In this document: positions 4,873 to 62,454 of the stretch, in pieces
How positions within the stretch are numbered: position 1 is the stretch's first letter
Layout of the letters: each line of letters opens with the position of its first letter
Translations under genes and position numbers: made by a program
NCBI GenBank assembly: GCA_025558095.1
Contig: JAIVFI010000011.1
Span: 186,001-250,000 of the forward strand
DNA from: Hyaloraphidium curvatum SAG 235-1
Lineage: Eukaryota; Fungi; Monoblepharomycota
Direction of reading: 5' to 3'
Length of the DNA stretch: 64,000 nt
Notes under the pieces: model-generated
Told to the model about the DNA's origin: nothing
Seen by the model: the letters and a program-made list of their open reading frames with translations, nothing else
The model's database searches: none

Positions 4873-5032
4873 CGGCACCTCCTCCTTCTTCGCTGCCGCA
4901 GCACGCAGGCGGCCGATCACCTCTCAGACGTTGTTGATCGACGCCCGCAGGATGGATGGGCCAGATTCCGCACCAGCGGCAAAGGCCGGCAAAAGAAAGC
5001 GCGAGACGGGAATCCCCGCCGAGCACGCGAAG

Positions 5033-5815
5033 ATGACCACCGCCCTGCGCACCGCCTTTGTCCGCGCCGGCGGGCACCGGTTGGAGTACCTGCGCATCCC
5101 GGGACGCCCAGGCAGGCCGGAACTGGTCTTCCTGCACGAAGGGCTCGGCTCCGTCTCGCTGCTCCGCGACTTTCCCGCCCGCGTGTGCGCGGCGACGGGG
5201 TCCCCGGGCTTGGTCTACTCGCGGTACGGGTACGGCCGCTCCGACGTGCTCCGGGAGGCGAGGAAGCCCGACTATCTGCACAAGGAGGCGCTCGAGACGC
5301 TGCCGGAGCTCCTCGGCCTCCTCGGAATCGAGCGTCCCGTCCTCGTGGGGCACTCGGACGGCGCTTCGATCGCCCTGATCCACGCGGCCCATTACCGCGA
5401 CACCCGCGGGGTCATTGCCATGGCGCCACACAGTTTCGTCGAGGATGTCACGATCAAGGGCATCCTCGGCGCCAAGAAGGCCTTCGAGACGACGGATTTG
5501 AAGGAGAAGCTGGGGAAGCACCACTCGGACCCCGAAAAGACCTTCAGGGGGTGGAACGACGTCTGGCTCTCCCCCGAGTTCCGCTCGTGGAACATCGAGG
5601 GCCTGCTACCGCGGATCCGGTGCCCCGTGCTCGGCATACAGGGGCACCAGGACGAGTATGCGACGATGAGGCAGCTGGAGGTGCTGGGTGAGAAGATCGC
5701 GGGGAAGGTGGAGCTGCTCGGGCTGGAGAACTGCAGGCACACGCCGCAGAGGGACCAGGAGGAGAGGGTGGTGGGGGCCGTGGCCGGGTTTGTGGATGCG
5801 ATCGCGGACGACTGA
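5033..5815 (+). CDS. Alpha/beta hydrolase (Abhydrolase_1/6), intronless, bacterial-like
   Basis: LVFLHEGLGSVS, YSRYGYGRSD, nucleophile elbow GHSDG, IQGHQDEY (acid) and CRHTPQ (His). Confidence 0.9.
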   Translation: MTTALRTAFVRAGGHRLEYLRIPGRPGRPELVFLHEGLGSVSLLRDFPARVCAATGSPGLVYSRYGYGRSDVLREARKPDYLHKEALETLPELLGLLGIERPVLVGHSDGASIALIHAAHYRDTRGVIAMAPHSFVEDVTIKGILGAKKAFETTDLKEKLGKHHSDPEKTFRGWNDVWLSPEFRSWNIEGLLPRIRCPVLGIQGHQDEYATMRQLEVLGEKIAGKVELLGLENCRHTPQRDQEERVVGAVAGFVDAIADD

Positions 5816-6287
5816 GGTCGGCCGGCCGGGGTGCCACGGTGCGGATCGTATAGGCTACAACAAAGAGGCCGCTCCGCGGCTTCAGGACGGAATCCTGACC
5901 ACCAGACATAAACTAGAGTATACCCATCATATAGAGCTTTTTTTGGCCTGGTTGTTTGCTTTCCCTCTGTCACAGGCCTGTTTTGAGGTGCTGTGGATTG
6001 CGCCTCGTCTCCAGCCGCAGCCCATCAGGAGGCGGGCCACACCCAAGATTCGGGGAAACCCGAGGTAAGCAACCGCTGGAATTGATACAACGAGGCCCCT
6101 GCCGCGATTTCCGCGCCTTCTCGGCGGCGATCGACGGCATCGACCGGGTTTCCGTATTTGTGTTTAGGCCCTGGCGGGGGCGAGGGCTTCGCTCGACCAT
6201 TTCCGGGCAGCACTGCACACAACAACCCAACCCCATGAACATCGTGCGATAGCGGCCTCCGCAGCGCCGCGCGGCAGCTTATTTATC

Positions 6288-9200
6288 ATGGCGGACGAGC
6301 GGGACCGCCCGCCGACGCCCGGGTCGACCGGGTCGGCGGACGAGCCGCTGACGTTCCCGGCGCGGTGGCGGCCGCCGCGGCTCTCCACCGCCGCGCCGCC
6401 GCGGCCGGCGTCGCCGTTCGCGTACACGCAGTCGCCCGTGTCGTACACGCCGTTCTCGGGCGGGCCGGGCAGCGTGCCGGGCAGCTCGCTCAACTCGCCC
6501 GCCTCGCCGTTCTTCTCGGCCGGCTCGGGCGGCGGCTACCAGCTCGGCCGCTCGCACTCGGTCGAGGTGCTGACCTCGTCGGCGCCCCGCTCCCGCGTCT
6601 CCACGCTCCACCGGCTTGCCCGCCCCCCCACGCCGTCGCCGCAGAGCCCGCTGTTCGGCTCGCCGCTGCACTCGCCGCTGCCAGGCTCGGCCTCCAAGCC
6701 GCTGTACTCGCCGTACCACGACCCGCACTACTCAAAGTACGCAAAGCCGCCGCGCTCGCCCTTCCGCGCGCTGGCCGTCGTGTGCCTGGTGGTCATGCTG
6801 GTCGGCTCGGCCGTGCTGTGGTGGACCGTGGACGTGGAAAAGGCCGAGGAGACCGGGCGCATCCTCGAGGGCAAGAAGCCCAAGTACGTGCTCTACCGCA
6901 TCCTCGGCAACGACCTGCCCCCGCGGCACCGCGTCGGCCAGACCTACAGCAACCTGCAGTTCATCCTCAAGCACGAGCCCGACTTTTCCGACACGGAAAA
7001 GTGGTGGCTGCTCAACCGCATCGTGGACCCGCAGGTGGAGCGCGAGATCGTGGACCTGCTCACGCGGCACCGGCAAAAGTACGTCCGCGTGCCCTTCCGG
7101 GACGAGGAGTACGTGCGCCGCGACTTCCGGCTCGAGGACTTTCCCCTGCCGGACTACTTCCGCGCGCGCGAGTTCCTCGAGCACGGCCACGCCGCGCGGC
7201 TGCGCATCCTCGACTCGTCGTACCACGACAAGAACCAGTACGTCATGAACAACAACGGCGGCCGCAACCACGCCATCCTGCACGGCCGCCACGCCGTGCG
7301 CGCGCGGTGGATCCTGCCCTTTGACGGAAACGCCTTTTTGACCAAGCGCGCGTGGACGGAAATCACGCGCGCGCTGGAAAAGCACGGGGAGCGGTACAAG
7401 TACCTCGTCGTGCCCATGCACAGGCTGCTCAACAACACGAGGGCGCTGGACGAGAACTTCAGGCCGCTGGCGAGGGAGGAGCCGCAGATCGTGTTCAGGG
7501 AGGACGCGGAGGAGATGTACGACGTGCGCATGCGGTACGGGCGGCGTAGCAAGGTGGGTTGCTGAACAGGAGGTCTGCGTGCACAACGTTGACCTTTCGT
7601 CACCATGCTTCCCACAGCTCGAACTGCTCTGGCGCCTCGGCGTGCTGCCCGCGACGCCCTACCTCTCCAACTCCTCCACCTTCCCCTGGGAGCTCAACCC
7701 CGCCTGGCGCCTCTCCCCCAGCGCCGGCCGCTTCCTCCGCGCCGGCTTCGTCCTGCGCCTCTTCTCGGGCCGCCCCGAGCAGGAGGTCGCCACGCGCCGC
7801 GCGGCCAGCCGCCGCGCCTACAACCGCATGCTGGGCGTGCAGAGCGTCATCGACGGCATCGACGAGGGCATCGTCGGGCGGGTGCTCAACGCGCCTGAGG
7901 TCGAGGCGGCGGACGGGGAGGGGCCGAGGAGGAGCAAGGGGTGGTGGGTGTGGGAGGAGGAAGCGTTGAGGCATGCCAGGAAGGTGTGGGAGCGGCGCGG
8001 GGCCGCGGGTGTGAGGAAGGGGAGGGACGGCGGGGTGGAGAAGTGGGTCGGGAGGGTGCTGGATGCTGCCAAGGGGGAGATGGAGCAGAGCGCGGCGGCG
8101 GGCGTGACGCTGCGGGACTTCCTGGACTATGTGCGGCCCGGTGCGCGGCCGGGCAGGCAGCGCGCGACGGTGGCGCCGCCCGACGGGCAGGGCAAGCCTT
8201 CCTACGTGGACGTGTCGCTGGTGCAGCCGGCGGCGCTTCCGCGGGCGCTGCGGAAGGTGGCGGTGCTGGCGCTCGCGACCGAGCTGTCGGGCGACGAGGC
8301 GTACGCGACGGCCGCGGCCACCGAGGTGCGCCGGTGGATCCTGGGGCAGGGCATGTCGATCCCGCCCTCGGTCCTGACGACAGCACGCAAGGGCTTGGAG
8401 CAGCGCGCCCCGACGGCCAAGCAGCACCTGATGGGCATGTGCAGCGGCCTTCCGGCCTTTTTGGACGCGCTGCGGATCCTGGGCCGGGACGGCAGGTTTA
8501 CCGAGTCCGAGTGGGCCGAGGTGCGCGGGGTGCTCGCGACGCTGCTGCGCTTCCTGCTGGCGTCGGACATTTCCCGCGAGCTGGACCTCAAGAGCCGCGA
8601 GTGGGAGAGCGTGCGCGGGGATGCGGCCATCGCCTCGCTCGCCGGGTTCCTGGGGGACGTGCGGAGCTGGAACCGCATCATCACCGGCGCGCGCATGCGC
8701 GTGGGAGGGAGCCTGGGGGAGGACGAGGGGTGCGTCGACGCTGCGCCGCCGCCGGCGGGGTTGGCTGCCGACGCGGAGGGCGACGGCGCGGAAGGGTCCG
8801 AGGGGCCTTCATCCATTTCGCCGCCCGAAGGCGACGACGCCGATGCCAAGCCGACCGTCGCGCAGGCCCAGGTCGCCATCGTGGCGCCGCCGCCCAAGTC
8901 GGCCGACACCTTCCTGGACGCCGTCGAGGGCAAGGCGCACCTGCTGCAGTGGTGGATCGCCCTGGCCCGCGTCTTCGAGTCGGGATACGGGCGCTTCCGC
9001 ATGAACGAGCAGGACCGCGCTGGCTGGATCGACCCGACGCCGCCGTTGGGCAACCTGGCCCCGGCGCTGTGGACCCTCAGGACCAGCCACGCGACGTGCA
9101 AGAACGTGAGCATCGCGGGCGCCACCAAGGCGGGCCTTCGCGTGCTCGCGGCCGACGTGGAGCGGGTGTGGGGCCTGTGGGGCATGTCGCCGGACCAGGA

Positions 9201-29417: not shown

Positions 29418-31184
29418 TCATCTATAGTACACGCTTCCTGGAACGGATGACCCGGCGATACTGTAAGAGGGCAGGCTTCCGTTGCCTGTGCCGTACGTCC
29501 CGCCCATCGCCTGTGTGGCGGGGGGATCAAAATAGCTGTCTATGACCTCGTTCTGCATGATGCCAGAGGATTGGCGAACCCGCGACGGCGACGATCTGCG
29601 GGGCGTTGGCTCCCTGGCGACGGGGATCGATTGGCTCGCCTGCGAAACCGTGTAGGTCGTTGGCATGGAGGCCGTGTACGCTGCCGGGGGTGCTTCGGGC
29701 ATGCGAGGCGTAGCTCCAGAGCTATCGGTCGTGCAGCAGTCGCAGGTCCCCGAGCACACCGAATCGTTGTCACCAGCGTCGGGATCCTTGTTAGTGACTC
29801 CCAAGCTCCGCTGCGGCGACACCGCGGTCCTCGACGTGGCGGTCGTTGCCGCGCTGGTGGGTGACTCGGGATCCTCACTGGCGAGCGTCTCCACCGATTG
29901 CAGCTCGACCGCTTGCTTCTTCTTCTTTGGCCGCGCCAAAGCCCAGAACGTCACGGCAGCAATGAGCCAAACGACAATGAGGCCTCCAACGGAAGCGCCG
30001 ATGATCAGTCCCAGGTTCAGCGTGGCAGGTGCTCCCGTCTCCACGGGAAGCGGGGCAGTTTCGTTGTTCAAGGGGATCGCGAAGCCCGGGGTCAGGCCCG
30101 ACGACGCAGATTGCACGCACGAGCCGATGAAGACGCTCTGCTCGCCGGTTTCGTTCCTGCGCAGGAGGCATCCTTGGCCCGTGCCCAAGGTGGCTGCCCT
30201 GCCGGTATTGATCAGCATCCTGCTTGTGTCCCAGGGTCGTGCAGGATCCATGGGAGCGAGCGACCAATGCTCGGACGACACTTCGGCTGCCGCCTCCTGG
30301 CGCCGCCCGAGCACTTTTGCAAGAATGCCACGAGAGGTATGAGCCGTCCTCGCGGGGCATGTCTTGATCACCAGGACGCCATCGTACCGCGAACTCAGAC
30401 AGCTTCCGGCCTCGGTGGTCAGCTCCATCAGAAACGAAAGGCAGTTCGATGTCGACGCCGCCGAGCACCGTGCGGAGAAAACGATTGGAGGAGACGAAAG
30501 CTTGCAGTTGGTAAATTCCGTGGAGGTGCACGACAGCCCGGTGCCGGCGCTCGAATACACGACGAGGGCGCTGCCTGGGTAAACGGGAACAACTGATTCC
30601 GTCGCGATAGGGAACGGCGTGTGTGACCGTGTCGAAGTCATCGTCGTTGTCTCCGTGCTCATAGCCTCCACTGACTCCGTGGAGCTCGGCGTCGCTGCCA
30701 GAGTCGCCGTCGGCGAGACCTCAAAAGTTGACGTCGGCGCCTCGGTCGCAGACGGGAAGGGGTCCGTCATCATGGAGGGCACAACAGACGTGCTCAGCAA
30801 GGTTGGACCCGTCTGCAACGTAGCCGTGGCCGTCACGTCGGATCCGGGAGTTTGTGGGGGCAGCTTGCTCGCGATTTCGGGCGGCGTCCGCGTGCGGGTC
30901 TCCTCTGTTGACACCGCCAGACTCGCGGATGCCGTTGCGTCCCCGACCAAGCCGGTGGTGCTGGTGAGAAGCAATGTCGCCGAAATGAGGTCGGAGAGCG
31001 TCGTCGTGTCCGTCGAGAGCAATGTGGGCGTCAAGGTGGGCCCGAATGTCAAGCTCGGCGTCGGGGACAGGGTGCTGCTTCCGTCACCCTGCTCCGGAGA
31101 TTGCGCCGAAACCCCGGCCGGGGGCAAAGCCAGGAGGCATACAAGGCTTGCCGCAAGGCGAGCCATTCGCCCGGAGGCCACCAT
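29418..31184 (-). CDS. Type I membrane protein with Ser/Thr-rich stalk and ricin-B-like ectodomain; paralogue of 18932-20395
   Basis: Signal peptide MARLAASLVCLLALPPAGVSA, mucin-like S/T region, MLINTGRAATLGTGQGCLLR and TM LIIGASVGGLIVVWLIAAVTFWAL. Confidence 0.8.
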   Translation of the reverse strand: MVASGRMARLAASLVCLLALPPAGVSAQSPEQGDGSSTLSPTPSLTFGPTLTPTLLSTDTTTLSDLISATLLLTSTTGLVGDATASASLAVSTEETRTRTPPEIASKLPPQTPGSDVTATATLQTGPTLLSTSVVPSMMTDPFPSATEAPTSTFEVSPTATLAATPSSTESVEAMSTETTTMTSTRSHTPFPIATESVVPVYPGSALVVYSSAGTGLSCTSTEFTNCKLSSPPIVFSARCSAASTSNCLSFLMELTTEAGSCLSSRYDGVLVIKTCPARTAHTSRGILAKVLGRRQEAAAEVSSEHWSLAPMDPARPWDTSRMLINTGRAATLGTGQGCLLRRNETGEQSVFIGSCVQSASSGLTPGFAIPLNNETAPLPVETGAPATLNLGLIIGASVGGLIVVWLIAAVTFWALARPKKKKQAVELQSVETLASEDPESPTSAATTATSRTAVSPQRSLGVTNKDPDAGDNDSVCSGTCDCCTTDSSGATPRMPEAPPAAYTASMPTTYTVSQASQSIPVAREPTPRRSSPSRVRQSSGIMQNEVIDSYFDPPATQAMGGTYGTGNGSLPSYSIAGSSVPGSVYYR

Positions 31185-31313
31185 GGTCCGTAGGACAGCG
31201 AGAATTAGACGGTGATCAACAACGGGGCCAACGGGGCTGAGTCGCCAAACAGAGAGCGCGTGCTGGGAGCACAACCCAGGCACAAACGAAAGGGAGGCCA
31301 AGATAGAATCGAA

Positions 31314-33305
31314 TCAACACAAACAGATCACACTGCTGCAAGCTAGGCAGAAGGGCATGTCGTCGTCGAAACGCTTCCGCATGCGCGCCTGCCAACCGGC
31401 GACCTTCATGACGGCAACGATCTGCTGGACCACCTGGGTCGAAAACGAGTTGCCAAGCTGCTCGTGCCGGCGAAGATTGGATGCCTGCGATACCGTCCCG
31501 AGGAGAGTATAGTTGTCCGGGAATCCGAGCAGGCGCTCTTCTTCCACCGGCAACAGCGGGCGCACCCGCGGATCCTCGTGAGTGAACCCGGCATAGGGCT
31601 GCTCGGTCAAGCGCGGATCTCGCACAAGGGTGCCATGTGTAGTCCTTTCGGAAGGCGTCAGCTCAACGATGTTCTCGGAAGACGTACAAGACTGCTGCAG
31701 ACCTCACGATGCACACAGCCTTCTTGCGCCAGTGTTCCAGCGGATAGCCGCTCACGAGCATGTCTGCGAGATTGGGTTCCGGCCACGGAGTCACCAACGG
31801 TTGCACCCGGAGGTTGGTCCAATCTGCACGACGAGATTGTCAGCAACTGCGCATCCGGCAAAGTCAAGAGCCCACAAAGGCGATCTCTCTTGCATGCAGA
31901 CACTCGATCCGCCATATATCGAACCGGCTGAACCCCCATCTCTGTGGACGGATCGTGCTCAGTTGCGTTGAAGTCGTTGGCGGCACACAATACCTCGGGA
32001 GATCGTCTGCAGATCCTCGCTCGGCATCCCGTACACATTTTCGAGCAAGAAAGGCACGTGCGGCTTCGCCTTCGGCCCGGCATTGACTCTGTCGACAATC
32101 TCCAGTATGCGGGGCTGTGCCGGAGGGCAATGTAGCTCAGGTCCAATGCTAACAACTACGGCGAGAGGACCCACGATATGGAAGAACAGCTTGCTCCTGC
32201 TACCGTTCAATCCAAGTCTATCGGGTCCTTTTGCACGGGACAGATCCTGGCACGGAGAACCGCCAATGACAAAGTCGATCGGTCCGAGCTGCCGCGCCAT
32301 CTCCTCGGTAAAGCTCTCGACGTTGCCTGCAAATGTCAAATGTTAGGGAAGCAAATGACAGGAGAGCGCTGAAGGAGCACGATACCCACCTAAATGGAAA
32401 ACGTTCGAATGATTCTTGGTCACGACCGCCGCGCACTCCCGATTGAGCTCGAACGACAGTACGCGACCAACCCTGATCCCCGCCCGCTTCAGCGCGACGA
32501 GGTCGCCGCCGATCCCCGTGAACAGAGACAGGACGCAGATCCCATCGAACGGCAGGCTCGCAAAGTTGGCCGGCAGCTGCGGCGGCGAGATCGGAACCTT
32601 GCCTCTCGCCGCCGGGCTCCTCGTGTTCTCCAGCTCGAGTGCGCGCTTGAGGGAGCCCGATGCTCGGTCGTAGTAGTCGGGCGTGATCGAGATCGACAGC
32701 GAGACCTTCATCGACCACCGAGCGTCTGGAGCTTGGAGCACGGTTCCGCTGATCGTGGCAACTCCCGAGTCGAGCAGAGGCGCGAGCTCCCTGACGAACG
32801 TCGCGGGAAGGAACCCGAGCTGATTCGGCACGTTCTCATGCTCCGCGGCCGACGCTCCGGGCGTTGCTCGAGTGCGGCACACCGCGACGGCGTTGGAGTC
32901 ATAGGGGTTCTCGCGCTGGCGGAAGAAGAGCACGGGCTCGCCGACGGCCGCGGCGCCCGCGTTCCTCGTGTGCTTGAAGGCCCCTGCAACGGGAACTTCC
33001 AGGACCAAGCGCTGCGGAGAAGTCGCGGCCGGGGCGACGGTGCCTCCCGGCGTGCCGCCGCCGACGACGAATCCCGGCTTGTGCACCCCAGAAGTTGAAG
33101 CTCCACTTGACCTGGCAACTCGCTCGGCGTGCAGCTGGCTCAAAAGAGAAGTTGGAAGGGGTGCAGGTGCCGCGTAGACGCGTGGCTTTTTGACTGTCTC
33201 CCCGCCGCCCTCTGGCGCCCGCCGCTTCCGCGCCGGTGGAGGGGACGGGACCGCGATGGTCTCTTCGTCATCGTCCGAAACGAGGTCGATGACGATGGGG
33301 GCCAT
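31314..33305 (-). CDS. HIRAN domain-DNMT3-like C5 cytosine DNA methyltransferase fusion, 6 exons (about 570 aa)
   Basis: HIRAN: VAGAFKH...GEPVLFFRQRENPYDSNAVAV...QLGFLPATFVRELAPLLDSG. MTase motifs in canonical order: I VLSLFTGIGG, II SFE, III GNV, IV DFVIGGSPCQDLS, SKLFF, VI FLLENV, VIII SACKRDRLYWTNL, IX EERLLGFPDNYT, X LGNSFS. Introns 32389-32327, 32174-32115, 31993-31942, 31875-31824, and 31702 (or 31687)-31645. Confidence 0.88.
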
Positions 33306-33433
33306 CGCTGGATGTGGTGGAGGGCGGGGCGGGGCGTTTTGGGCGTGGGGGGCGCTCCGGTTGCACGAGTCACCACGATCGAAAGGACCACTGGAGACGA
33401 CTTTCGGAAAGCTTTGAGACTGGCAAATGGCAT

Positions 33434-34795
33434 TCATTGGGAAAGGAACCCTCCATCGACGTGGACCTCGGATCCAGCTGTGAGGGGAACGGAGGGGAGG
33501 CCGAAGACCGGGGAGGTCAACACGACAAAGGCAACCGCGGAGACGGGAAATGACCCACTCATGAAGCTGGCCTCGTCCGAAACCAGGAACAGCATCGCGT
33601 TCGCAATCTCCTCCGGCTGCCCGAACCTCCCCATGGGCGTGAGGTGCCTCAGCACCTGTTTCACCCGCTCCTCGTTCCCCCGCGTGCCCGGAGTGTCGAT
33701 CACGCCAGGGTGGACGCTGTTGCAACGTATGTTGTAGCCCCGCCTGGCGCAGTACATGGCCGTGGATTTGGTGAGGATGCGGACGGCGCCTGGCGGGCGG
33801 GAGAGTCAGCGCGCGGCTCGCGAGGGCAGCGACCGGCGTGCCTTTGCTGGACGAGTAGGGAGCGCTGCCCGTGCCGATTCCGCCGACGACGGCTGCGATG
33901 CTGGCGGTGTTGACGATGCTCTTGCTCTCCTGTGAGCGACGTGGAGGGCACACACGAAAGATGAGTCGACGAAGGAACAAACACCAGGCAGAGCAGCAAG
34001 CGTCGATTCGGCGGCGTCCCCGACGCGCGGGGCACAGCGATCGTCAACTCACGGGGTTCTGGTTCTTCTTCATGCTCTGCGGCACAAGTGGAAGGTAAGG
34101 GAGCCGATCGCCCTCAAACTCCCTGAAGATCCCACCTTGATGCCGTGCTTGGTTCCCAAAAACACGCCCCCGGCGTTCACGTCCATCGTCCTGTTCCACT
34201 TCGCCAGCCTTTGTTGGGGGGGCGCGCCGATGACGAGTGACCTTCCGGACCTGGCGAAGGCCCGGCGCCGTCACCCACGTGATGTCCTCGAGCGCATCGA
34301 TGTCCTTGGCCGACGCGTCCAACCCGGCGTTGTTGACTAGCGCGTCGATGGGTCCCCAGCGGTCTTCGACGCTGCCCGCCCCCGGAATCAGCCCTCTCGT
34401 TCCCGAACCGCCGGCGGACCACCCACGCCTTGATGCATGCCTCCCATTGCCCCTCGTCCCTCACGTCCATCTCGAAGAACGCCACCTCGGGCGCCCCCGG
34501 CACCTCGTCCCGGATCCTGCGCATGAGCGCGTGCGCGCCCTCCTTCTGCCGCGGCAGGTCGAAGATGGCGACGCGCGCGCCTTCCTGCGCGAAGCGGAGG
34601 GTGGCGGCGGCGCCGATCCCCGAGCCGCCGCCCGTGATTATGACTGGCGGTTTTGGGCATCGCGGGGGAGGGGTTTGGCGGGGCGTCACGCCGAGGGGAG
34701 GGTTTGGGAGGGGTGAGGGAGGCGTGGGAGACGGTGCCGGGGGACGCACCGATTTTGCCCTGGCCCGTGGACTTGTTGACGAGGCGGCCCGGCAT
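33434..34795 (-). CDS. Classical short-chain dehydrogenase/reductase (SDR), multi-exon
   Basis: VIITGGGSGIG, LVNNAG, SIVNTAS, YSSSK, IRCNSVHPGVIDT, PMGRFGQPEEIANAMLFL and VDGG. Confidence 0.92.
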
Positions 34796-56940: not shown

Positions 56941-59900
56941 CTAACCCTCGATCACAGCCTGGTCGGCCGCCGCCGACGCCGACAGAGATTCCTTGGGCTC
57001 CCCGCCCGTCTCGTCCACCTCCATGCTAACCATCTTTTCGGCCGGTGCAGCCGCCGTCTGCTCCACCAGTGCAACCGAGATCTCCGTTCCACCGTTCGCG
57101 ACCGCCGCCTCAGGCCCGGGGACCCCGGCTGGCTTAGGCGGGGGCGCGCTGTCCGCCGGCTCCTCCACCTTGCCCGCGGTGTCCGACCTCGTCGAATTGC
57201 CCTGCATCGCCGTTGCGCTCGATGCACTCCGCGGCGAACCCGAGTCCCTCCCCGCCGCGCCGACGGATTGCTGTACGGCCGGCTGGAACGGGCCTGCCAC
57301 GATCGGCGGCAAGCTGACCGACACCGGCTGGCCGAGCTGCGCCGGGGCCTGGAACCACATGTTGAACGTCGAGTTGGCCGTCGAGGGGGTTGAAGCTGGC
57401 GAATCCTTGCCACTCTGCTGTCCTGCCTGCGGGGGAGCACCGCCGTAGAAGCTGATGGGGGCCCGCACGGGAGAGCCGGTCGGGATCACGATCGCGGGGA
57501 GCGAAACGTGCGCGCCCGACACCCAAGGCACATAGATCTGGTCGGGTCGGCCGGGTGCCGGAGCGCCGGGGAACGAGGGCTTGTAGGAAGAGTGTCCATG
57601 CACGACCGCGGCAGAGGTGTCCACGGTCGGCATGGGCAGACGGGCATGCTGCGCGAGCGGTCCTCCGGGCCCTGCCAACGGGGAGCTCTTGGCCGGGGTG
57701 TGCGAGGGCCGCTTGTGGCGGTGCTGGTTTGGAGAAGATCGCGAGGAAGGATGGCCGTCCGAGGGGCGGGAAGAAGTCTTGGCGCCGTGCTCACCGGCGA
57801 CCTGCGGAGGCCGCGGCGACTTGGGCCTCTTCTTCTTCTCCACCGGCGCCGTCCGTAGCGAGACGAGCGTCGCAACAATGTCGAAGCCCTCGCCCTGGGT
57901 GCTTGCGCGGCTACCGGGCCGGGCGATGGGTGCCGCCTGGTCCGCAAACTCCTCCTCAGGCTCCATGTGACGCGGGAGGTGCGGCCGGTGGTGGTGGTGC
58001 TTGCGCTTCTTGCTCGGCGCCGGGTACTGCAGGTCCACCTGGGCCGAGTGTCGCTTGGGGGGCGGCGGGACCTCGTCCATCTCGGCATCCGGATCCATCT
58101 CCTCCTGCTCGGCAAACTGCTCGTCCTCCTCTTCCTCCTCGTAGTACTCGCCTTCTTCCATGTCCCACTCCCCCTCGTCCTCGTCGTACTCCTGCCCGCG
58201 CGGCTGGGAGCGGTGCTGGCGCAACTCGTGCCGGGACGATCCGTGCCGCGGCTCCGGCTCGGGCTGCAGGATCCTGCTCTCCATGGCCGCGCGCTGCCGC
58301 TCCGACGTCCTGCGCCCGCCGCCCATGCCCATGCCGAACGCCGAAGGGTTGACGGCGCTCCGCGAGAGGGCGTTCATCCGGAGGAGCACCTCGTCGAGCG
58401 GCGCTTCGGTCTTGCGGCGCGGAGGTAGGCGATCCGTGGGTTCTTTGGGAGGAGGCGGTGGGTGCACGGGCAAGGAGATTGAGGGCGCCCTGCTGCGCGA
58501 CGTCCCGGGCATCGGCTCGGACGATGCGCTCGGCGGGGTCGGCGCGTCCCTGACGGTCTCCTTGAGAGAAACGCTGCTGCTCCGCCGCAGTGCAGGAGGC
58601 GGCACCGAAGGCTTCGAATTGGCACGCGGCCTGGCCTGCTGCGCGCCGCCGGCCGCCGGCTCCTGGTCCACGACGGGTCTGGCAACTTCCTGGGTCGCAG
58701 CCGCGGGTTTCGTGCCCTTGGCGTGCGACGACGACGCAATCGATGCCCTGCGCTCGGATCGCTGCAAGGGAGGCCGCGGCTCGGGCCTGGATTGCGCGGG
58801 CTCCGTCTTGATCTCGGATGGACTGCGGAAGCAGAATGTCGGACAGATCAACGACCATGCCTCGCGGATCAAACACGATCGACGCCCACCTTTCGCGTGT
58901 CCGCTCCGCGCAATCGCCCGCCGCGCTCCCGTCCGCTTGTTGCCCCGCGGCGGCCGCCGCCCGCTCCGCCTCCTCCTCCTCCTGGTGCTGCCTCTCGTGA
59001 GACTTGAGCTGCCCGCGGCTGTAGAACCACTTGTCGCACCCCGGGTACCGGCACCGCGGGAAGTCGTCGAGCGTCATCAGGTCCTCGACCTCGGTCCGCC
59101 GGCGCTTGTCCCGCTCCTCGGGCGACATGGACCGATTGGGCCGCTCGCCGAAGGACCACGAGGCCGACACGCCCCTGCCGTCCGCGGCCCGCGCCGCGCG
59201 CGTGCCAGCACGGCGCGCTGAAGACGCGGCGTCACCAGCTGCCCCGTCCAAGGAACGCGCCGAATCGGCCTCGCTCTCTGATGCCGCCTCGGCCTTGGCA
59301 CGCGCCGCGGGCTCGGGCCGCACCCCGCCCTTGACCTTCTTCTTGGGCTGCGGTCTGGGCGCGGGTTCCGCTTCCGCAGGCGGGTCCGCCGCCGGCGCGG
59401 GTGCAGCATCCTCGGGAGCGGGCGACGCCTCGGAGGCATCCGCGGCCGCTTCCTCGCGCTTGGCCTCGAACTCGTCCTCGACCTGGGGCGATTCCTCCTT
59501 CTTTTCCGGCTTGGCCTTGGGCGGCTCCGGATCGGTGTCGATCCCGTGCGCCGACTTCATGTGCGACCGCAGCTGCCCCTTGGTGTAGAACCAGCGGTTG
59601 CACTTTGGGAAGCTGCACAGCGGGTACGTCGCCACGCCGTTGACCAGCAGCGTGCCCTCCTTGTTGGGCTGCTCGAAGACCACCTTCTTGTCCTCAGAGT
59701 CGGAGGCGTCGCCGGCCACCGAAGCGCGGCGCTGCTGCTTGGAGGGCGCGGGAGAGGGCCGCTCGGCGGGCGGGTCCGCGGGCGCCTTGCCCTTGTCCTT
59801 CTTGCCGCCCTCCTTCTTTGCCTCCGCGTCCTTTGCAGCCGCCGGCTTCTCCTTGTCCTTTGCCGGCGCCGGCTTGTCCTTCTCCTTGGCCTGCGCCGGC

Positions 59901-62454
59901 GCGGGCGGCGCGGCCCCGGAATGCCGCGCCTTGACAACTTCCTCGATCCCCTGCCCCCTGGCCCTCCTCGCCCTCCCTTGCTCCGGCTCCTGTTCCTCCT
60001 CCTCCTGTGCCTCCTCCTCGTGCGAGGCCAGGTGCGTGCGGAGCTGCCCCTTGCCGTAGAACCACTTGGGGCACCCGGCCACCGTGCAGCGGTACACCTG
60101 CATCAGCCCCATCCCGCCCGCGAACTCGTCCGCGAACCGGGGCTTGGCGGGCTGCGCAGGGGCAGCGGGAGGGGGTGCGGGCGGCGCGGCGCCGTCGGAG
60201 CGTGAGCGGGCGTGGGAGGGCTTGGGCTTTTCGCCAGCGGGGGTTGCGGGCTTCTTGGGCTGCGGGGGGGGAGGCGCGTCGCCGCCGGATTCCGAGGGCG
60301 GCGTCGCGGCGCGCTTCTTGGGGGCCGGCTTCTTGGGCCTGTCCTTGTCCTTGTCCTTTTCCCTGTCCTTGGGCTTGGGCTGATCCGGCTTGTCCTTGTC
60401 CGGTGGCGCCGGCGCCGGCTTCCCTGACGGCGCGGCCGGCGCCGACTCCCTCCTCCTGTGCGCTTTGGGCGCCCCGCCCCTCAGATGCGCCCTCTTCCTC
60501 TCCTTGAGCCCTGCATCGCCAAGGATCAGCCCTGATCATCCCCCGCAAGCGCGCAAAAGGCACTCACCGCACGCATTGCACAGGTAGTTCCTCCCGTCCA
60601 CCGTCCTCCTCCATGCCGGCGTGTGCGCCGTCCCGCACACGTGGCACCGCACCCCCGCGCGGCCCCTCCGCCCGCCGGGATCGTCGTCCCCGCTCCCGCC
60701 GCCGTCCTCGCCCCCCGATCCGCCGTCGGACTCGTCCGCGTCGCGCGAGGGGGGCTCAGAGGCGTCGTCGGCGTCGCCCGAGCCGGAGCCGGAGGGGGTG
60801 CCGGCGCCGGTGGGGGTGCCGCCCTCGGAGCCGGCGGCGCGGCGGCCGCGCGTGCTGCGGGAGGCGTCGCCGGCGGCGTCGGAGGGAGGGGGGGTGCGGC
60901 GGCGCTTGCCGAGCACGGATTCGTAGCCAGAATCACCCCGCGGGGGCGGTGGTCGGGGAGTCGGGGGGGAGAGGATGTCCGAGTCGTCCGGGACCGAGTC
61001 CAAGGGGGTGAACGGGAGCAAGGAGGGTGGGAGGGCGTGCGGGATGTACGGCCATCGTCGGTAAACACGGCCAGCAACCTGGATCGGGGGTGGATCAGCG
61101 GCCGGCCGGCGGGAGGGATCGGATTGGCGCACCTCCGAGGCGGGCACAGCGTCGTCCTCGTCCGCGGGGTCGTCGGGGTGCCACGGGACCGCGACGAAGC
61201 CGGGGCGGTTAAGCAGTGACCGCAGTCGGAATTTCTGCGCCGCGAGGGGTCAGATCGGATGGCCGGGAACCTCGGCGTGGAGCCCACCTTGCCGACCAGC
61301 ACCGGCGCGCCGCCATCCATCCTGATCCCCGACACCAGCAGGCACGCGTGCTCCGTCATCTCGCCCGCGGCGGCGGCCGCGGGCTCCAGGAGGCGCACGG
61401 CGTCGCCCACGCGCACGGATTCGGGGCCCAGGACGAGGCCGTCGGGGCTGCGGGGGCGGGGATCAGCGCGGATCGGCGGCGCGGATCGGGGGACCCACCT
61501 CGCCGGAGACGGCGATCCCGGGTCGGATGGGACAAAGGAAAAGTATTCCCGCCGTGCCAGGCGTGCGGCGACGCCGGGGTCGGCCTGGGCGGGGGAGGGA
61601 GGGGGGTAGTGCAAGAAGGGCAGGACGCGGTGCTCGGGCACGCCCGCGACGGCGCCCACGGGCCCGCCGTCCGCGCCGGCGAGGGAGTAGAGGTACCCGT
61701 CGCCGTCCGGGTCGGGCGATCGCGCGGCGACGACGAAGGGGGCGCGGGTGATCCCGCGGGGCAGGTGGGCCAGCCCGCGAACGGAGCCGAGCACGGCGTC
61801 CGAGGCCAGGCGGACGCCGCCGGCGCCGGTCTGCTCGAGGTGCAGCCAGACGAGGTCTCCGGGACGGAAGTCGGGTGCGCGGCCGCGCTCGGGGCGCGGC
61901 AGGGTGCGCGAGCGGAGGTCGGCCTCGGGGCCCAGCGCGGCGCGGGCGGCGTCCAGCGGGCGGATCGGGCGGCGGCGGCACGGCCTGCAGGCGCAGGCGC
62001 CGCGGGCGCCGCCAAAGAGCCACACGAGGTGCGGCCAGAACTCGTCCGGCGAGCGGAACTCTGACCGCGAGGGGTGGCCGGCGAGGTGTGCGGGGGCGTC
62101 GTCGGCCTTGCCGGCGCCGCGGGCGACGAGCGCGTAGCCGTGCGGCCACCGTGCGAGCCGCGGGTCGGTGCCGGCGGGGTTGGCGGCGGCCTCGGCGGGC
62201 GCGCTGCCCGCCCACGCAGCCATCTTCTCCGGCAGGCCGCCCGCGGCGTCGGCGTCGAGCAGCCGCCGCGGGTCGGCGGCGAAGGCGACGGCGGCCTCCG
62301 TCGGCAGGCCGCTCAGCCGCGCCAGGTCCCACAGGGCGGTCCACAGGGCGCCGAGCGCCGCCAGCCAGCGGTCGGTCTCGCGGGCCGGCGGGGGCGAGCC
62401 GATGCCGCCGCCCGGCGACCCGTCCGACAGCGGCGGGGGCTCCAGCGTGGCCAT
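56941..62454 (-). CDS. Large nuclear protein: Clr2 (cryptic loci regulator 2)-like N-terminus, BAH-like segment, GATA zinc finger and three dispersed C2H2 fingers, 5 exons
   Basis: Clr2 motif LARWPHGYAL...HLAGHPSRSEFRSPDEFWPHLVWL...CACRPC; FRPGDLVW; LGPESVRVGDAVRL; VAGRVY; GATA CHVCGTAHTPAWRRTVDGRNYLCNACGL; C-x4-C-x(K/R)WFYxxGQLxxH three times. Splicing at about 61287-61235, 61137-61079, 60566-60511 and 58889-58824 keeps the frame to TAG at 56941. Confidence 0.82.

What the first reader, a model, noticed from the sequence alone, without database searches (positions are those of the whole stretch)
31314..33305. HIRAN-DNMT3-like cytosine methyltransferase in a fungus: candidate fork/damage-targeted de novo DNA methylation system
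Seen in sequence: the ORF track splits this locus into four pieces, but five canonical GT-AG introns (about 43-63 nt) splice it into one open frame of about 570 aa. It runs: N-terminal SIM-like IVIDLVSDDDEE, bipartite NLS (RKRR...KKPR), a full HIRAN domain (REN-P-YD-SNAVAV, LGFLP, LAPLLD), then an intact C5-MTase with unpermuted motifs I-X including catalytic PC, ENV and RxR, and a short CxxC-x4-CxC tail. The spacing and wording resemble DNMT3/DRM catalytic domains and their bacterial/phage relatives: GPIDFVIGGSPC, LFF..RIL, FLLENV.GM...LQTISR.MGVQP, VSACKRDRLYWTNL, EERLLGFPDNYT, LGNSFS. Established: characterised fungal 5mC writers are DNMT1/DIM-2, RID/Masc1 and DNMT5, and DNMT3 is generally considered lost in fungi. 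Animal DNMT3 is targeted by PWWP/ADD histone readers. HIRAN (HLTF/Rad5) binds 3'-OH ssDNA ends at stalled forks. Inference: a histone-independent methyltransferase recruited by free 3' ends and SUMO could methylate at stalled forks, breaks or invading DNA. It is either a relic DNMT3 or an intron-acquiring HGT from bacteria, phage or giant virus.
Basis: partly seen in the sequence, partly recalled or inferred. Interest (0 to 1): 0.92.

Follow-up and report, generated by a model that had tools for sequence, protein, structure and literature searches.

The report
HIRAN-fused DNMT3-like cytosine methyltransferase, fungal
An early-diverging fungus (Hyaloraphidium curvatum) carries an intact, intron-bearing gene that joins a DNA 3'-end-binding HIRAN domain to a DNMT3/DRM-like cytosine-5 DNA methyltransferase, a combination I found in no paper, and fungi are said to lack this type of methyltransferase.

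Summary
On the minus strand, 33305-31314, six exons joined by five GT..AG introns (63, 60, 52, 52, 58 nt) give a 1707-nt frame of 568 codons. It encodes a disordered N-terminus, a HIRAN domain, a complete unpermuted C5-methyltransferase (motifs I, IV PC, VI ENV, VIII RxR, IX, X) and a four-Cys tail.

The window is Hyaloraphidium curvatum (Monoblepharomycota). The GenBank model here is a three-gene chimera that drops motif VIII. A 536-aa paralog elsewhere in the genome has the same architecture and all five intron positions.

The same fusion occurs in several unnamed environmental eukaryotic contigs. It was not found in any phage, bacterial or archaeal locus examined, where relatives carry the methyltransferase alone.

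Among solved structures the catalytic domain is closest to DNMT3A/B/C, then plant DRM2, and far from HhaI, DNMT2 and DNMT1. Uncharacterised phage/bacterial methyltransferases are equally close or closer.

In my tree the HIRAN enzymes form their own well-supported clade. Its link to DRM is unsupported. Animal DNMT3 could not be included, so "relic DNMT3 or old horizontal transfer" stays open.

Targeting to 3' ends is a reasonable inference. SUMO targeting is weak, because the SIM-like motif is absent from the paralog.

The parts
31314..33305 (-). Whole HIRAN-MTase gene: six exons, five introns, 568 codons
   Evidence: exon phases, no stops; colinear with paralog P0002; same intron positions in the paralog
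32390..33305 (-). Exon 1 (aa 1-305 plus 1 nt): disordered N-terminus, HIRAN, linker, MTase motifs I-II
33030..33305 (-). Disordered N-terminus (aa 1-92). Holds the SIM-like IVIDLV plus acidic run (33296-33279 and onward) and basic patches RKRR (33230-33219) and KKPR (33191-33180)
   Evidence: pLDDT below 50 for aa 1-92; motif coordinates. SIM/NLS roles are inferred and the SIM is not conserved in the paralog
32685..33014 (-). HIRAN domain (about aa 98-207). NPYD at aa 133-136, where Y135/D136 correspond to HLTF Y93/D94
   Evidence: Pfam PF08797 at 2.4e-12. AF2 model of exon 1 plus Foldseek: HLTF HIRAN E 8e-8, TMt up to 0.78. Alignment to HLTF. N133, D136, A139, G164 and D179 are invariant in the 15-sequence alignment A4
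32505..32525 (-). MTase motif I (LFTGIGG, aa 261-267), SAM binding
32327..32389 (-). Intron 1 (63 nt, GTGGGT..CAG, CTAAC branch site)
   Evidence: the JGI model P0001 uses the same junction
32175..32326 (-). Exon 2: motif IV with the catalytic Pro-Cys (SPCQD aa 329-333, 32258-32244; Cys331)
32115..32174 (-). Intron 2 (60 nt, in frame, GTGGGT..CAG)
   Evidence: same junction in P0001 and in the paralog
31994..32114 (-). Exon 3: motif VI ENV (aa 380-383, 32045-32034)
31942..31993 (-). Intron 3 (52 nt, GTATTG..CAG)
   Evidence: the position matches the paralog
31876..31941 (-). Exon 4 (66 nt): motif VIII RxR (KRDRL aa 414-418). The GenBank model omits this exon
   Evidence: the homologous exon is annotated in the paralog
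31824..31875 (-). Intron 4 (52 nt, GTGGGC..CAG, CTGAC branch site)
31703..31823 (-). Exon 5: start of the short target-recognition region
31645..31702 (-). Intron 5 (58 nt, GTCTGC..AAG, CTGAC branch site)
   Evidence: same junction in P0001
31314..31644 (-). Exon 6: rest of the TRD, motif IX (GFPDNYT 31526-31506), motif X (GNSFS 31454-31440), Cys tail CxxC-x4-CxC (31349-31317), stop
   Evidence: the tail is conserved in P0002, P0035, P0131 and L002

Best explanation
This is a functional nuclear gene of Hyaloraphidium curvatum. It encodes a 568-aa enzyme of a small, previously undescribed class of eukaryotic cytosine-5 DNA methyltransferases.

Shown:
- A HIRAN domain with the HLTF-type fold. 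It keeps the Asp that reads the 3'-OH and the adjacent stacking Tyr.
- The HIRAN domain is fused upstream of a complete C5-MTase domain.
- The catalytic core belongs to the DNMT3 / DRM / phage-type supergroup.
- A conserved four-Cys C-terminal tail.
- The fusion is old. Two H. curvatum paralogs share all five intron positions, and diverged copies exist in other uncultured eukaryotes.

Inferred mechanism: the disordered, basic N-terminus brings the protein into the nucleus. HIRAN docks on a free 3'-OH end of a DNA strand, such as a primer terminus at a replication fork, a gap, a resected break or a reverse-transcription intermediate. The tethered DNMT3-like domain then methylates cytosines in the adjoining duplex. 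Targeting would therefore be by DNA-end structure, not by histone marks, since the protein has no PWWP, ADD, BAH, chromo or UBA domain.

Origin: either a separate capture of a phage/bacterial-type MTase or an early offshoot of the DNMT3/DRM lineage. I lean slightly to the former.
For: Gene model and intactness.

Paralog with the same architecture and the same introns.

HIRAN:
- Pfam 2.4e-12.
- Fold match to DNA-bound HLTF HIRAN, E 8e-8, TMt 0.68-0.78.
- NPYD aligned to HLTF NPYD.
- The Asp is invariant in 15 sequences.
- D94 reads the 3'-OH and Y72/Y93 pinch the terminal bases (PMC5773155).

MTase:
- All catalytic motifs are present.
- The window's own domain (by reference, P0001:373-641) hits DNMT3A at 1.9e-24, DRM at 1e-22, HaeIII at 1e-6 and DNMT2 at 6e-6.
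- The family profile hits DNMT3A at 9e-54 in one stretch over the whole domain, DRM2 at 2e-41 and HhaI at 8e-19.
- For the AF2 model of the paralog, all Foldseek matches listed through rank 50 are DNMT3A/B/C, with TMt 0.81-0.88 against the catalytic-domain-only chains.

No other Pfam domain was found.

Family monophyly is supported at 100/97.

The fusion was seen only in eukaryote-like contigs. No HIRAN was found next to or fused with the related MTase in 160 viral/metagenomic loci, 80 bacterial loci or 1112 matching phage records.
Against: - There is no transcript, methylome or biochemical evidence. I found no 5mC data for H. curvatum.
- The GenBank model at this locus differs (a chimera), so splicing rests on homology and splice signals alone.
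- Outside the YD pair, HIRAN pocket residues are only partly conserved. For example, HLTF H110 aligns with Phe.
- The TRD alone has no significant similarity to any solved structure and is modelled with only moderate confidence. Sequence specificity such as CpG therefore cannot be claimed.
- The SIM-like motif is specific to this copy.
- Among named organisms the family was found only in H. curvatum.
Confidence: 0.6

Rival explanations
1. It is a true DNMT3 orthologue, a relic of the opisthokont DNMT3 lost in all other fungi, whose PWWP/ADD readers were replaced by HIRAN.
For: DNMT3A/B/C are the best solved-structure matches by sequence, profile and fold, across the whole domain in one stretch. 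The ML tree places the clade next to DRM and not inside a phage subclade. The TRD is short, 71-75 aa against a phage-type median of about 120.
Against: Support for the DRM link is only 51/49. Phage/bacterial-type MTases score 200-225 bits against the family profile, DNMT3A 186. A phage-type enzyme hits DNMT3A better (113 bits) than the fungal ones do (89-92 bits). There is no PWWP or ADD domain. The family is absent from all other named fungi in the databases searched, which would require many losses. No animal DNMT3 sequence was in my tree.
Confidence: 0.2
2. It is a genome-defence methylase. HIRAN captures 3' ends of invading or reverse-transcribed DNA (retroelement cDNA, target-primed nicks, linear viral genomes), and the MTase marks the new DNA for silencing. 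In this reading it does not act at host forks.
For: Same domain logic as the best explanation. The 3'-end-binding activity of HLTF HIRAN restricts HIV-1 replication in T cells (PMC6511057), which is a precedent for HIRAN acting on retroelement intermediates. The family has duplicated in H. curvatum, as defence genes often do.
Against: There is no link to transposons or viral DNA in the window. Neighbours are ordinary host genes. No experiment bears on it.
Confidence: 0.15
3. The annotated 752-aa protein (KAI9025478.1) is right: a short-chain dehydrogenase, a partial HIRAN, an MTase lacking motif VIII and a membrane tail in one polypeptide.
For: It is the deposited model. Intergenic gaps are only about 130 nt, so read-through transcripts are plausible.
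Against: The dehydrogenase has its own last intron (33558-33478) and ends with the canonical ...VDGG... C-terminus and a stop at 33434. The model skips the exon carrying the RxR motif, which the paralog's model keeps. It also removes the first ~105 codons of this gene's reading frame. The paralog is annotated as a stand-alone 536-aa HIRAN-MTase next to unrelated genes.
Confidence: 0.04
4. It is an inactive or decaying copy, or it acts on RNA like DNMT2.
For: No activity data exist. DNMT2 appears among weak PDB hits.
Against: There are no stops or frameshifts, and all catalytic motifs are intact in both paralogs and in distant members. The DNMT2 match is about 18 orders of magnitude weaker than the DNMT3 match for the window's own domain, and about 40 for the family profile. 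HIRAN is a DNA-end binder.
Confidence: 0.05

Closest known systems
Animal DNMT3A/3B/3C catalytic domain
   Same: Best match among solved structures by sequence (1.9e-24 for the window's domain, 9e-54 for the family profile) and by fold (TMt 0.81-0.88 against catalytic-domain chains). Same motif order, a short TRD, and a motif IV of the form GGSPC-x-DLS.
   Different: No PWWP or ADD domain; HIRAN sits in their place. Has a Cys tail. About 28-30% identity. Clade membership was not tested because no DNMT3 sequence was available by id. Phage-type enzymes are at least as close.
Plant DRM1/DRM2
   Same: Second-best solved match (1e-22; profile 2e-41). Exon 6 (motifs IX-X) alone matches DRM best. Weak sister placement in the ML tree.
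   Different: DRM is circularly permuted and carries UBA domains. This enzyme is unpermuted and has none. Sister support is only 51/49.
Orphan phage/prophage C5-methyltransferases (PHROG 116 type, often auto-named 'DNMT3A' by KO)
   Same: Highest-scoring relatives outside the family (139 bits pairwise, 200-225 bits to the profile; phrog_116 at 4.7e-38). Share SPCQDLS and the motif VIII RxR-YWTN wording.
   Different: About 300-400 aa, single domain, no HIRAN within 4-6 kb. Prokaryotic or viral context with no introns. TRD mostly longer. They do not include the HIRAN clade in the tree.
HLTF / Rad5 HIRAN domain
   Same: Same fold (TMt up to 0.78). NPYD with the 3'-OH-reading Asp and the stacking Tyr (PMC5773155).
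   Different: No SNF2 translocase or RING. The effector here is a methyltransferase. The residue aligned with HLTF H110 is Phe.
DNMT5 (SNF2-RING-MTase of fungi and protists)
   Same: It is also a C5-MTase fused to modules of the Rad5/Rad8 family (named Rad8/DNMT5 in PMC7862722). This gives a second, independent pairing of fork-remodeller parts with a DNMT (inference).
   Different: DNMT5 carries SNF2 and RING, not HIRAN. No DNMT5 chain appeared among the listed PDB matches.

Membership tests
C5 cytosine DNA methyltransferase (PF00145) | Motifs I (FxGxG), IV (PC), VI (ENV), VIII (RxR), IX and X, in canonical order | tested here: met
   LFTGIGG, SPCQD, LENV, KRDRL, GFPDNYT and GNSFS, in that order across exons 1-6
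C5 cytosine DNA methyltransferase (PF00145) | SAM-dependent methylation of cytosine C5 in DNA | not testable with these tools
   Needs an enzyme assay or a methylome
DNMT3 (animal-type de novo MTase) | Catalytic domain nearest to DNMT3 among characterised enzymes | tested here: met
DNMT3 (animal-type de novo MTase) | Falls inside the DNMT3 clade in a phylogeny, closer to DNMT3 than to prokaryotic MTases | tested here: inconclusive
   No DNMT3 sequence was available by id. The clade stands alone (100/97), and its link to DRM has 51/49 support. Profile scores are 200-225 bits for phage-type and 186 for DNMT3A
DNMT3 (animal-type de novo MTase) | PWWP and ADD chromatin-reader domains N-terminal to the MTase | tested here: not met
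   Pfam finds only HIRAN and DNA_methylase in the window exons and in the paralog
DNMT3 (animal-type de novo MTase) | CpG-reading TRD loop (DNMT3A R836 region) | tested here: inconclusive
   The global alignment puts an Arg-Ser pair opposite DNMT3A Arg-Ser in the TRD loop. The TRD alone has no significant hit and has moderate pLDDT
DRM (plant de novo MTase) | Circular permutation (motifs VI-X before I-V) and UBA domains | tested here: not met
   Motif order is canonical and there are no UBA domains. The DRMs fetched do show the permutation
HIRAN domain (PF08797) | Profile match above the curated cutoff and an HLTF-like beta-barrel fold | tested here: met
   46.9 bits against a 24.7 cutoff. Foldseek HLTF HIRAN E 8e-8, TMt 0.68-0.78, rmsd 2.4-3.5
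HIRAN domain (PF08797) | 3'-OH-reading Asp and stacking Tyr (HLTF D94, Y93) | tested here: met
   Y135 and D136 align to HLTF YD. The Asp is invariant in alignment A4. Residue roles are from PMC5773155
HIRAN domain (PF08797) | Binding of DNA 3' ends | not testable with these tools
   Needs a binding assay
HLTF/Rad5 fork remodellers | SNF2 ATPase and RING finger | tested here: not met
   No such domains
DNMT2 / DNMT1 / DNMT5 | Catalytic domain nearest to that family | tested here: not met
   DNMT2 at 6e-6 against DNMT3A at 2e-24. DNMT1 and DNMT5 are absent from the listed hits
Phage/bacterial orphan C5-MTase | Single-domain protein in a prokaryotic or viral genome | tested here: not met
   Five spliceosomal introns, an 816-kb fungal contig with host genes on both sides, and a separate clade

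The most novel reading that the evidence does not exclude
HIRAN-DNMTs are a new class of eukaryotic de novo cytosine methyltransferase. They would be guided by free DNA 3'-OH ends (nascent strands, repair gaps or retroelement intermediates) and not by histone marks or small RNAs. They are present in Monoblepharomycota and in several unidentified microbial eukaryotes. If so, the DNMT3/DRM-type catalytic lineage is not wholly absent from Fungi.
Probability: 0.3. Interest if true: 0.85.

Novelty: new variant of a known kind. Interest (0 to 1): 0.66.

Why it matters
Recent reviews state that no fungus has a DNMT3-type enzyme, and that fungal 5mC is written by DNMT1/DIM-2, RID and DNMT5 (PMC13297926, PMC7862722). 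This gene shows that a DNMT3/DRM-like catalytic domain does exist in an early-diverging fungus, attached to a module whose known job is to grip the 3' end of a DNA strand.

If the enzyme is active, it offers a directly testable way of aiming de novo methylation by DNA structure instead of chromatin marks. It would also be a natural example of coupling 5mC deposition to replication, repair or retroelement intermediates.

It also corrects a mis-annotated GenBank protein. Finally, it flags a small family of orphan DNMTs that surveys of fungal methyltransferases appear to have missed.

Tried and rejected
1. The joined (spliced) 568-aa protein has no reference, so I did not search, fold or align it. 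Instead I searched exons singly by reference. As by-reference stand-ins I used P0001:373-641 (the window's own MTase domain minus exon 4) and the paralog P0002.
2. I could not get any animal DNMT3, DNMT1, DNMT5, DIM-2 or RID sequence as an id. The word-index searches returned only DRMs and prokaryotic types. The full reference tree was therefore not built.
3. The first try of the search for related loci, with an alignment holding a fragment, failed. It worked after I dropped the fragment (A2).
4. I looked for a phage or bacterial HIRAN-MTase fusion or neighbourhood as the donor and found none. Two long BFVD phage hits with poor rmsd could not be inspected.
5. The TRD alone against the PDB gave no hit, so I dropped any claim of CpG specificity.
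6. I tried to name the organisms behind the environmental homologues through cluster look-ups of neighbouring genes. No names came back.
7. The Bewick et al. 2019 fungal survey is not held in the library.
8. I considered a giant-virus or transposon context and found nothing of that kind in the window.
9. No contig that I took for human was met.
Full report
WHAT IS THERE

The window matches Hyaloraphidium curvatum, a zoosporic-lineage fungus of the phylum Monoblepharomycota. A GenBank protein of that species, KAI9025478.1 (P0001), is 100% identical to the translated locus.

On the minus strand an ATG at 33305 opens a frame that is interrupted five times and ends with a stop at 31314. The exons are 33305-32390, 32326-32175, 32114-31994, 31941-31876, 31823-31703 and 31644-31314. 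The introns are 63, 60, 52, 52 and 58 nt and all are GT..AG. Three have a CTRAC branch site 13-16 nt before the acceptor. Exon lengths and phases add up to 1707 nt, which is 568 codons plus stop, with no internal stop.

I checked this by phase arithmetic on separate exons. All searches on the window gene were exon by exon by reference. Where a longer stretch was needed I used P0001:373-641 (the window's own MTase domain minus exon 4) or the paralog P0002. No contig I took for human was met.

GENE MODEL VERSUS ANNOTATION

The deposited 752-aa model is a chimera of three genes.

- The upstream short-chain dehydrogenase has its own last intron (33558-33478). It ends with a canonical ...VDGG... 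C-terminus and a stop at 33434, which is 128 nt before our ATG.
- The deposited model splices from that dehydrogenase into the middle of exon 1. It keeps introns 1, 2 and 5 as I place them.
- It skips the 66-nt exon 4, which carries the RxR motif.
- It then runs on into the next gene, a Ser/Thr-rich membrane protein.

A second H. curvatum protein, KAI9009076.1 (P0002, 536 aa, on another contig), is annotated as a stand-alone protein with HIRAN plus DNA_methylase. It aligns colinearly with all six window exons. Its annotated gene has introns at exactly the same five positions. No transcript-derived protein for this locus exists in the collections searched.

DOMAINS

Residues 1-92 are predicted disordered. 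They hold the SIM-like IVIDLV...DDDEE motif and two basic patches.

The HIRAN domain covers roughly aa 98-207:
- Pfam E is 2.4e-12, at 46.9 bits against a cutoff of 24.7.
- An AlphaFold model of exon 1 has pLDDT around 90 over this part.
- Its best PDB matches are DNA-bound HLTF HIRAN structures (E 8e-8, TMt 0.68-0.78), then a bacterial HIRAN and Rad5.
- The NPYD of the window aligns with the NPYD of HLTF.
- In HLTF, D94 reads the 3'-OH and Y72/Y93 pinch the two terminal bases (PMC5773155). The Asp is invariant in 15 aligned sequences.
- HLTF H110 aligns with Phe, so the pocket is only partly conserved.

The methyltransferase has motifs I (aa 261-267), IV with Pro-Cys (Cys331), VI ENV, VIII RxR, IX and X in canonical order.

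The protein ends with CxxC-x4-CxC. The same tail is present in the paralog, in the environmental homologue L002, and in P0035 and P0131. It is modelled with low confidence and is probably a small zinc knuckle (inference).

WHO ELSE HAS IT

An exhaustive HMMER scan of 1.84 billion representatives with exon 1 found only two relatives that match the HIRAN part: the paralog and one environmental relative.

Word-indexed searches found further HIRAN-MTase proteins:
- P0035 (803 aa) and P0131 (605 aa), both single ORFs.
- P0132, P0135 and P0136 with their cluster members, which are cut short by introns.

All of these sit on contigs with eukaryote-type neighbours such as Tam41, Vps4-like, RAB3GAP and split genes. 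None carries an organism name. Among named organisms the family was seen only in H. curvatum.

By contrast, the MTase domain alone has hundreds of relatives at about 30% identity. These occur in IMG/VR viral contigs, JGI metagenomes, GTDB bacterial genomes of many phyla, and 1112 GenBank phage records. Every one of them matches only the MTase part of the query, starting at P0002 residue 189 or later. A local HIRAN HMM found no HIRAN ORF in the 240 flanked loci, while it recovered all seven positive loci. On present evidence the fusion is a eukaryotic invention.

WHICH METHYLTRANSFERASE FAMILY

Against all PDB sequences, the window's own domain hits as follows:
- DNMT3A: 1.9e-24
- Tobacco DRM: 1.1e-22
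- DNMT3B: 8e-22
- HaeIII: 1e-6
- DNMT2: 6e-6

Exon 6 alone matches DRM best. The paralog gives the same order.

A profile of seven family members hits as follows:
- DNMT3A: 9e-54, in one stretch over the whole catalytic domain
- DRM2: 2e-41
- HhaI: 8e-19
- DNMT2: about 5e-12

DNMT1 and DNMT5 are not among the listed hits.

The AlphaFold model of the paralog has a mean pLDDT of 78.7, and above 90 over most of the MTase. All of its Foldseek PDB matches listed through rank 50 are DNMT3A/B/C, with TMt 0.81-0.88 against the catalytic-domain-only chains. So "DNMT3-like" is correct as a description.

It is not enough for membership, for four reasons:
- Uncharacterised phage/bacterial MTases (PHROG 116) score 200-225 bits against the same family profile, while DNMT3A scores 186.
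- One such phage-type protein hits DNMT3A at 113 bits, better than the fungal proteins do at 89-92 bits.
- PWWP and ADD are absent.
- The TRD on its own matches nothing.

I built an ML tree of 58 sequences under LG+C20: HIRAN enzymes, un-permuted plant DRMs, phage/bacterial types and generic Dcm-like outgroups. The seven HIRAN enzymes form one clade with 100/97 support. That clade sits next to DRM with only 51/49 support. Both rise from a poorly resolved phage/bacterial radiation.

Rows I left out:
- Animal DNMT3, DNMT1/2/5, DIM-2 and RID, because none was available by id.
- One IMG/VR locus whose match region contained stops.

The question of relic DNMT3 versus old horizontal transfer therefore remains open. 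I lean slightly to an independent capture, because of the narrow distribution and the phage-type scores.

HOW IT LIKELY WORKS

Shown: an intact catalytic domain, an intact HIRAN fold with the 3'-OH-reading Asp, no chromatin-reader domain, and conservation across paralogs and distant members.

Inferred: nuclear import through the basic N-terminus, docking of HIRAN on a free 3'-OH strand end, and methylation of nearby duplex DNA by the tethered DNMT3-like domain.

Which 3' ends are targeted is unknown. Candidates are primer termini at forks, repair gaps and resected breaks. Another candidate is reverse-transcription intermediates, as suggested by HLTF HIRAN-dependent restriction of HIV-1 (PMC6511057).

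The SUMO idea rests on one PIAS-like SIM that the paralog and the other members I read lack, so it is at most a feature of this copy.

One parallel is worth noting (inference). DNMT5 joins a C5-MTase to the SNF2 and RING parts of the Rad5/Rad8 family (PMC7862722). This enzyme joins one to the HIRAN part.

NOVELTY

Two reviews state that no fungus has DNMT3 (PMC13297926, PMC7862722). A 180-species survey lists other orphan DNMTs but not this one (PMC10538959).

Full-text searches for HIRAN together with DNMT or methyltransferase terms found no description of the fusion. The Bewick 2019 survey could not be read. The paralog is in GenBank with a generic name, so the sequence is public but, as far as I can tell, unremarked.

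I rate it a new variant of a known kind: a known catalytic supergroup and a known DNA-end reader, in a new combination and in an unexpected kingdom.

LIMITS

- There are no RNA, methylome or enzyme data.
- The reference tree lacks DNMT3.
- The taxa of the environmental homologues are unknown.
- The TRD is modelled with moderate confidence only.

Noticed in passing
window 29418-34749 (-): GenBank protein KAI9025478.1 (752 aa) fuses three adjacent genes: a short-chain dehydrogenase, the HIRAN-MTase and a Ser/Thr-rich membrane protein. Intergenic gaps are only about 130 nt. The dehydrogenase has its own intron (33558-33478) and a stop at 33434.
   Followed up: yes
window 31317-31349 (-); also the C-termini of P0002, P0035, P0131 and L002 near 8880-8900: A family-wide C-terminal motif with four Cys (CxxC-x4-CxC) lies at or near the very end of the protein. 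It is probably a zinc knuckle. It has low model confidence and its role is unknown.
   Followed up: partly
N-termini of P0002, P0012 (L002), P0035, P0131, P0135, P0136: A short motif of the form G-F-x-S-[AS]-x-x-L recurs, sometimes two or three times, in the disordered N-terminal regions of family members. It is not obvious in the window copy. It may be a partner-binding peptide.
   Followed up: no
window 60526-62454 (-): An ORF with a Clr2 transcription-silencing domain (Pfam 3.8e-13), next to a C2H2 zinc-finger ORF at 57956-60112. These chromatin genes lie about 27 kb from the methyltransferase and have no evident link to it.
   Followed up: no
L087 (IMGVR GVMAG-M-3300027754-30), 5001-5825: A giant-virus metagenome bin carries a related single-domain MTase (33% identity). 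In the tree it groups with phage types, not with the HIRAN clade.
   Followed up: partly
L004 1914-4325; L001 10001-11889; L002 7141-8897: Intron content differs across the family. P0035 is one uninterrupted 803-aa ORF. Both H. curvatum copies have five introns. The L002 homologue, the relative closest to the two H. curvatum copies, seems to have those plus a stop-containing interruption in the HIRAN region.
   Followed up: partly
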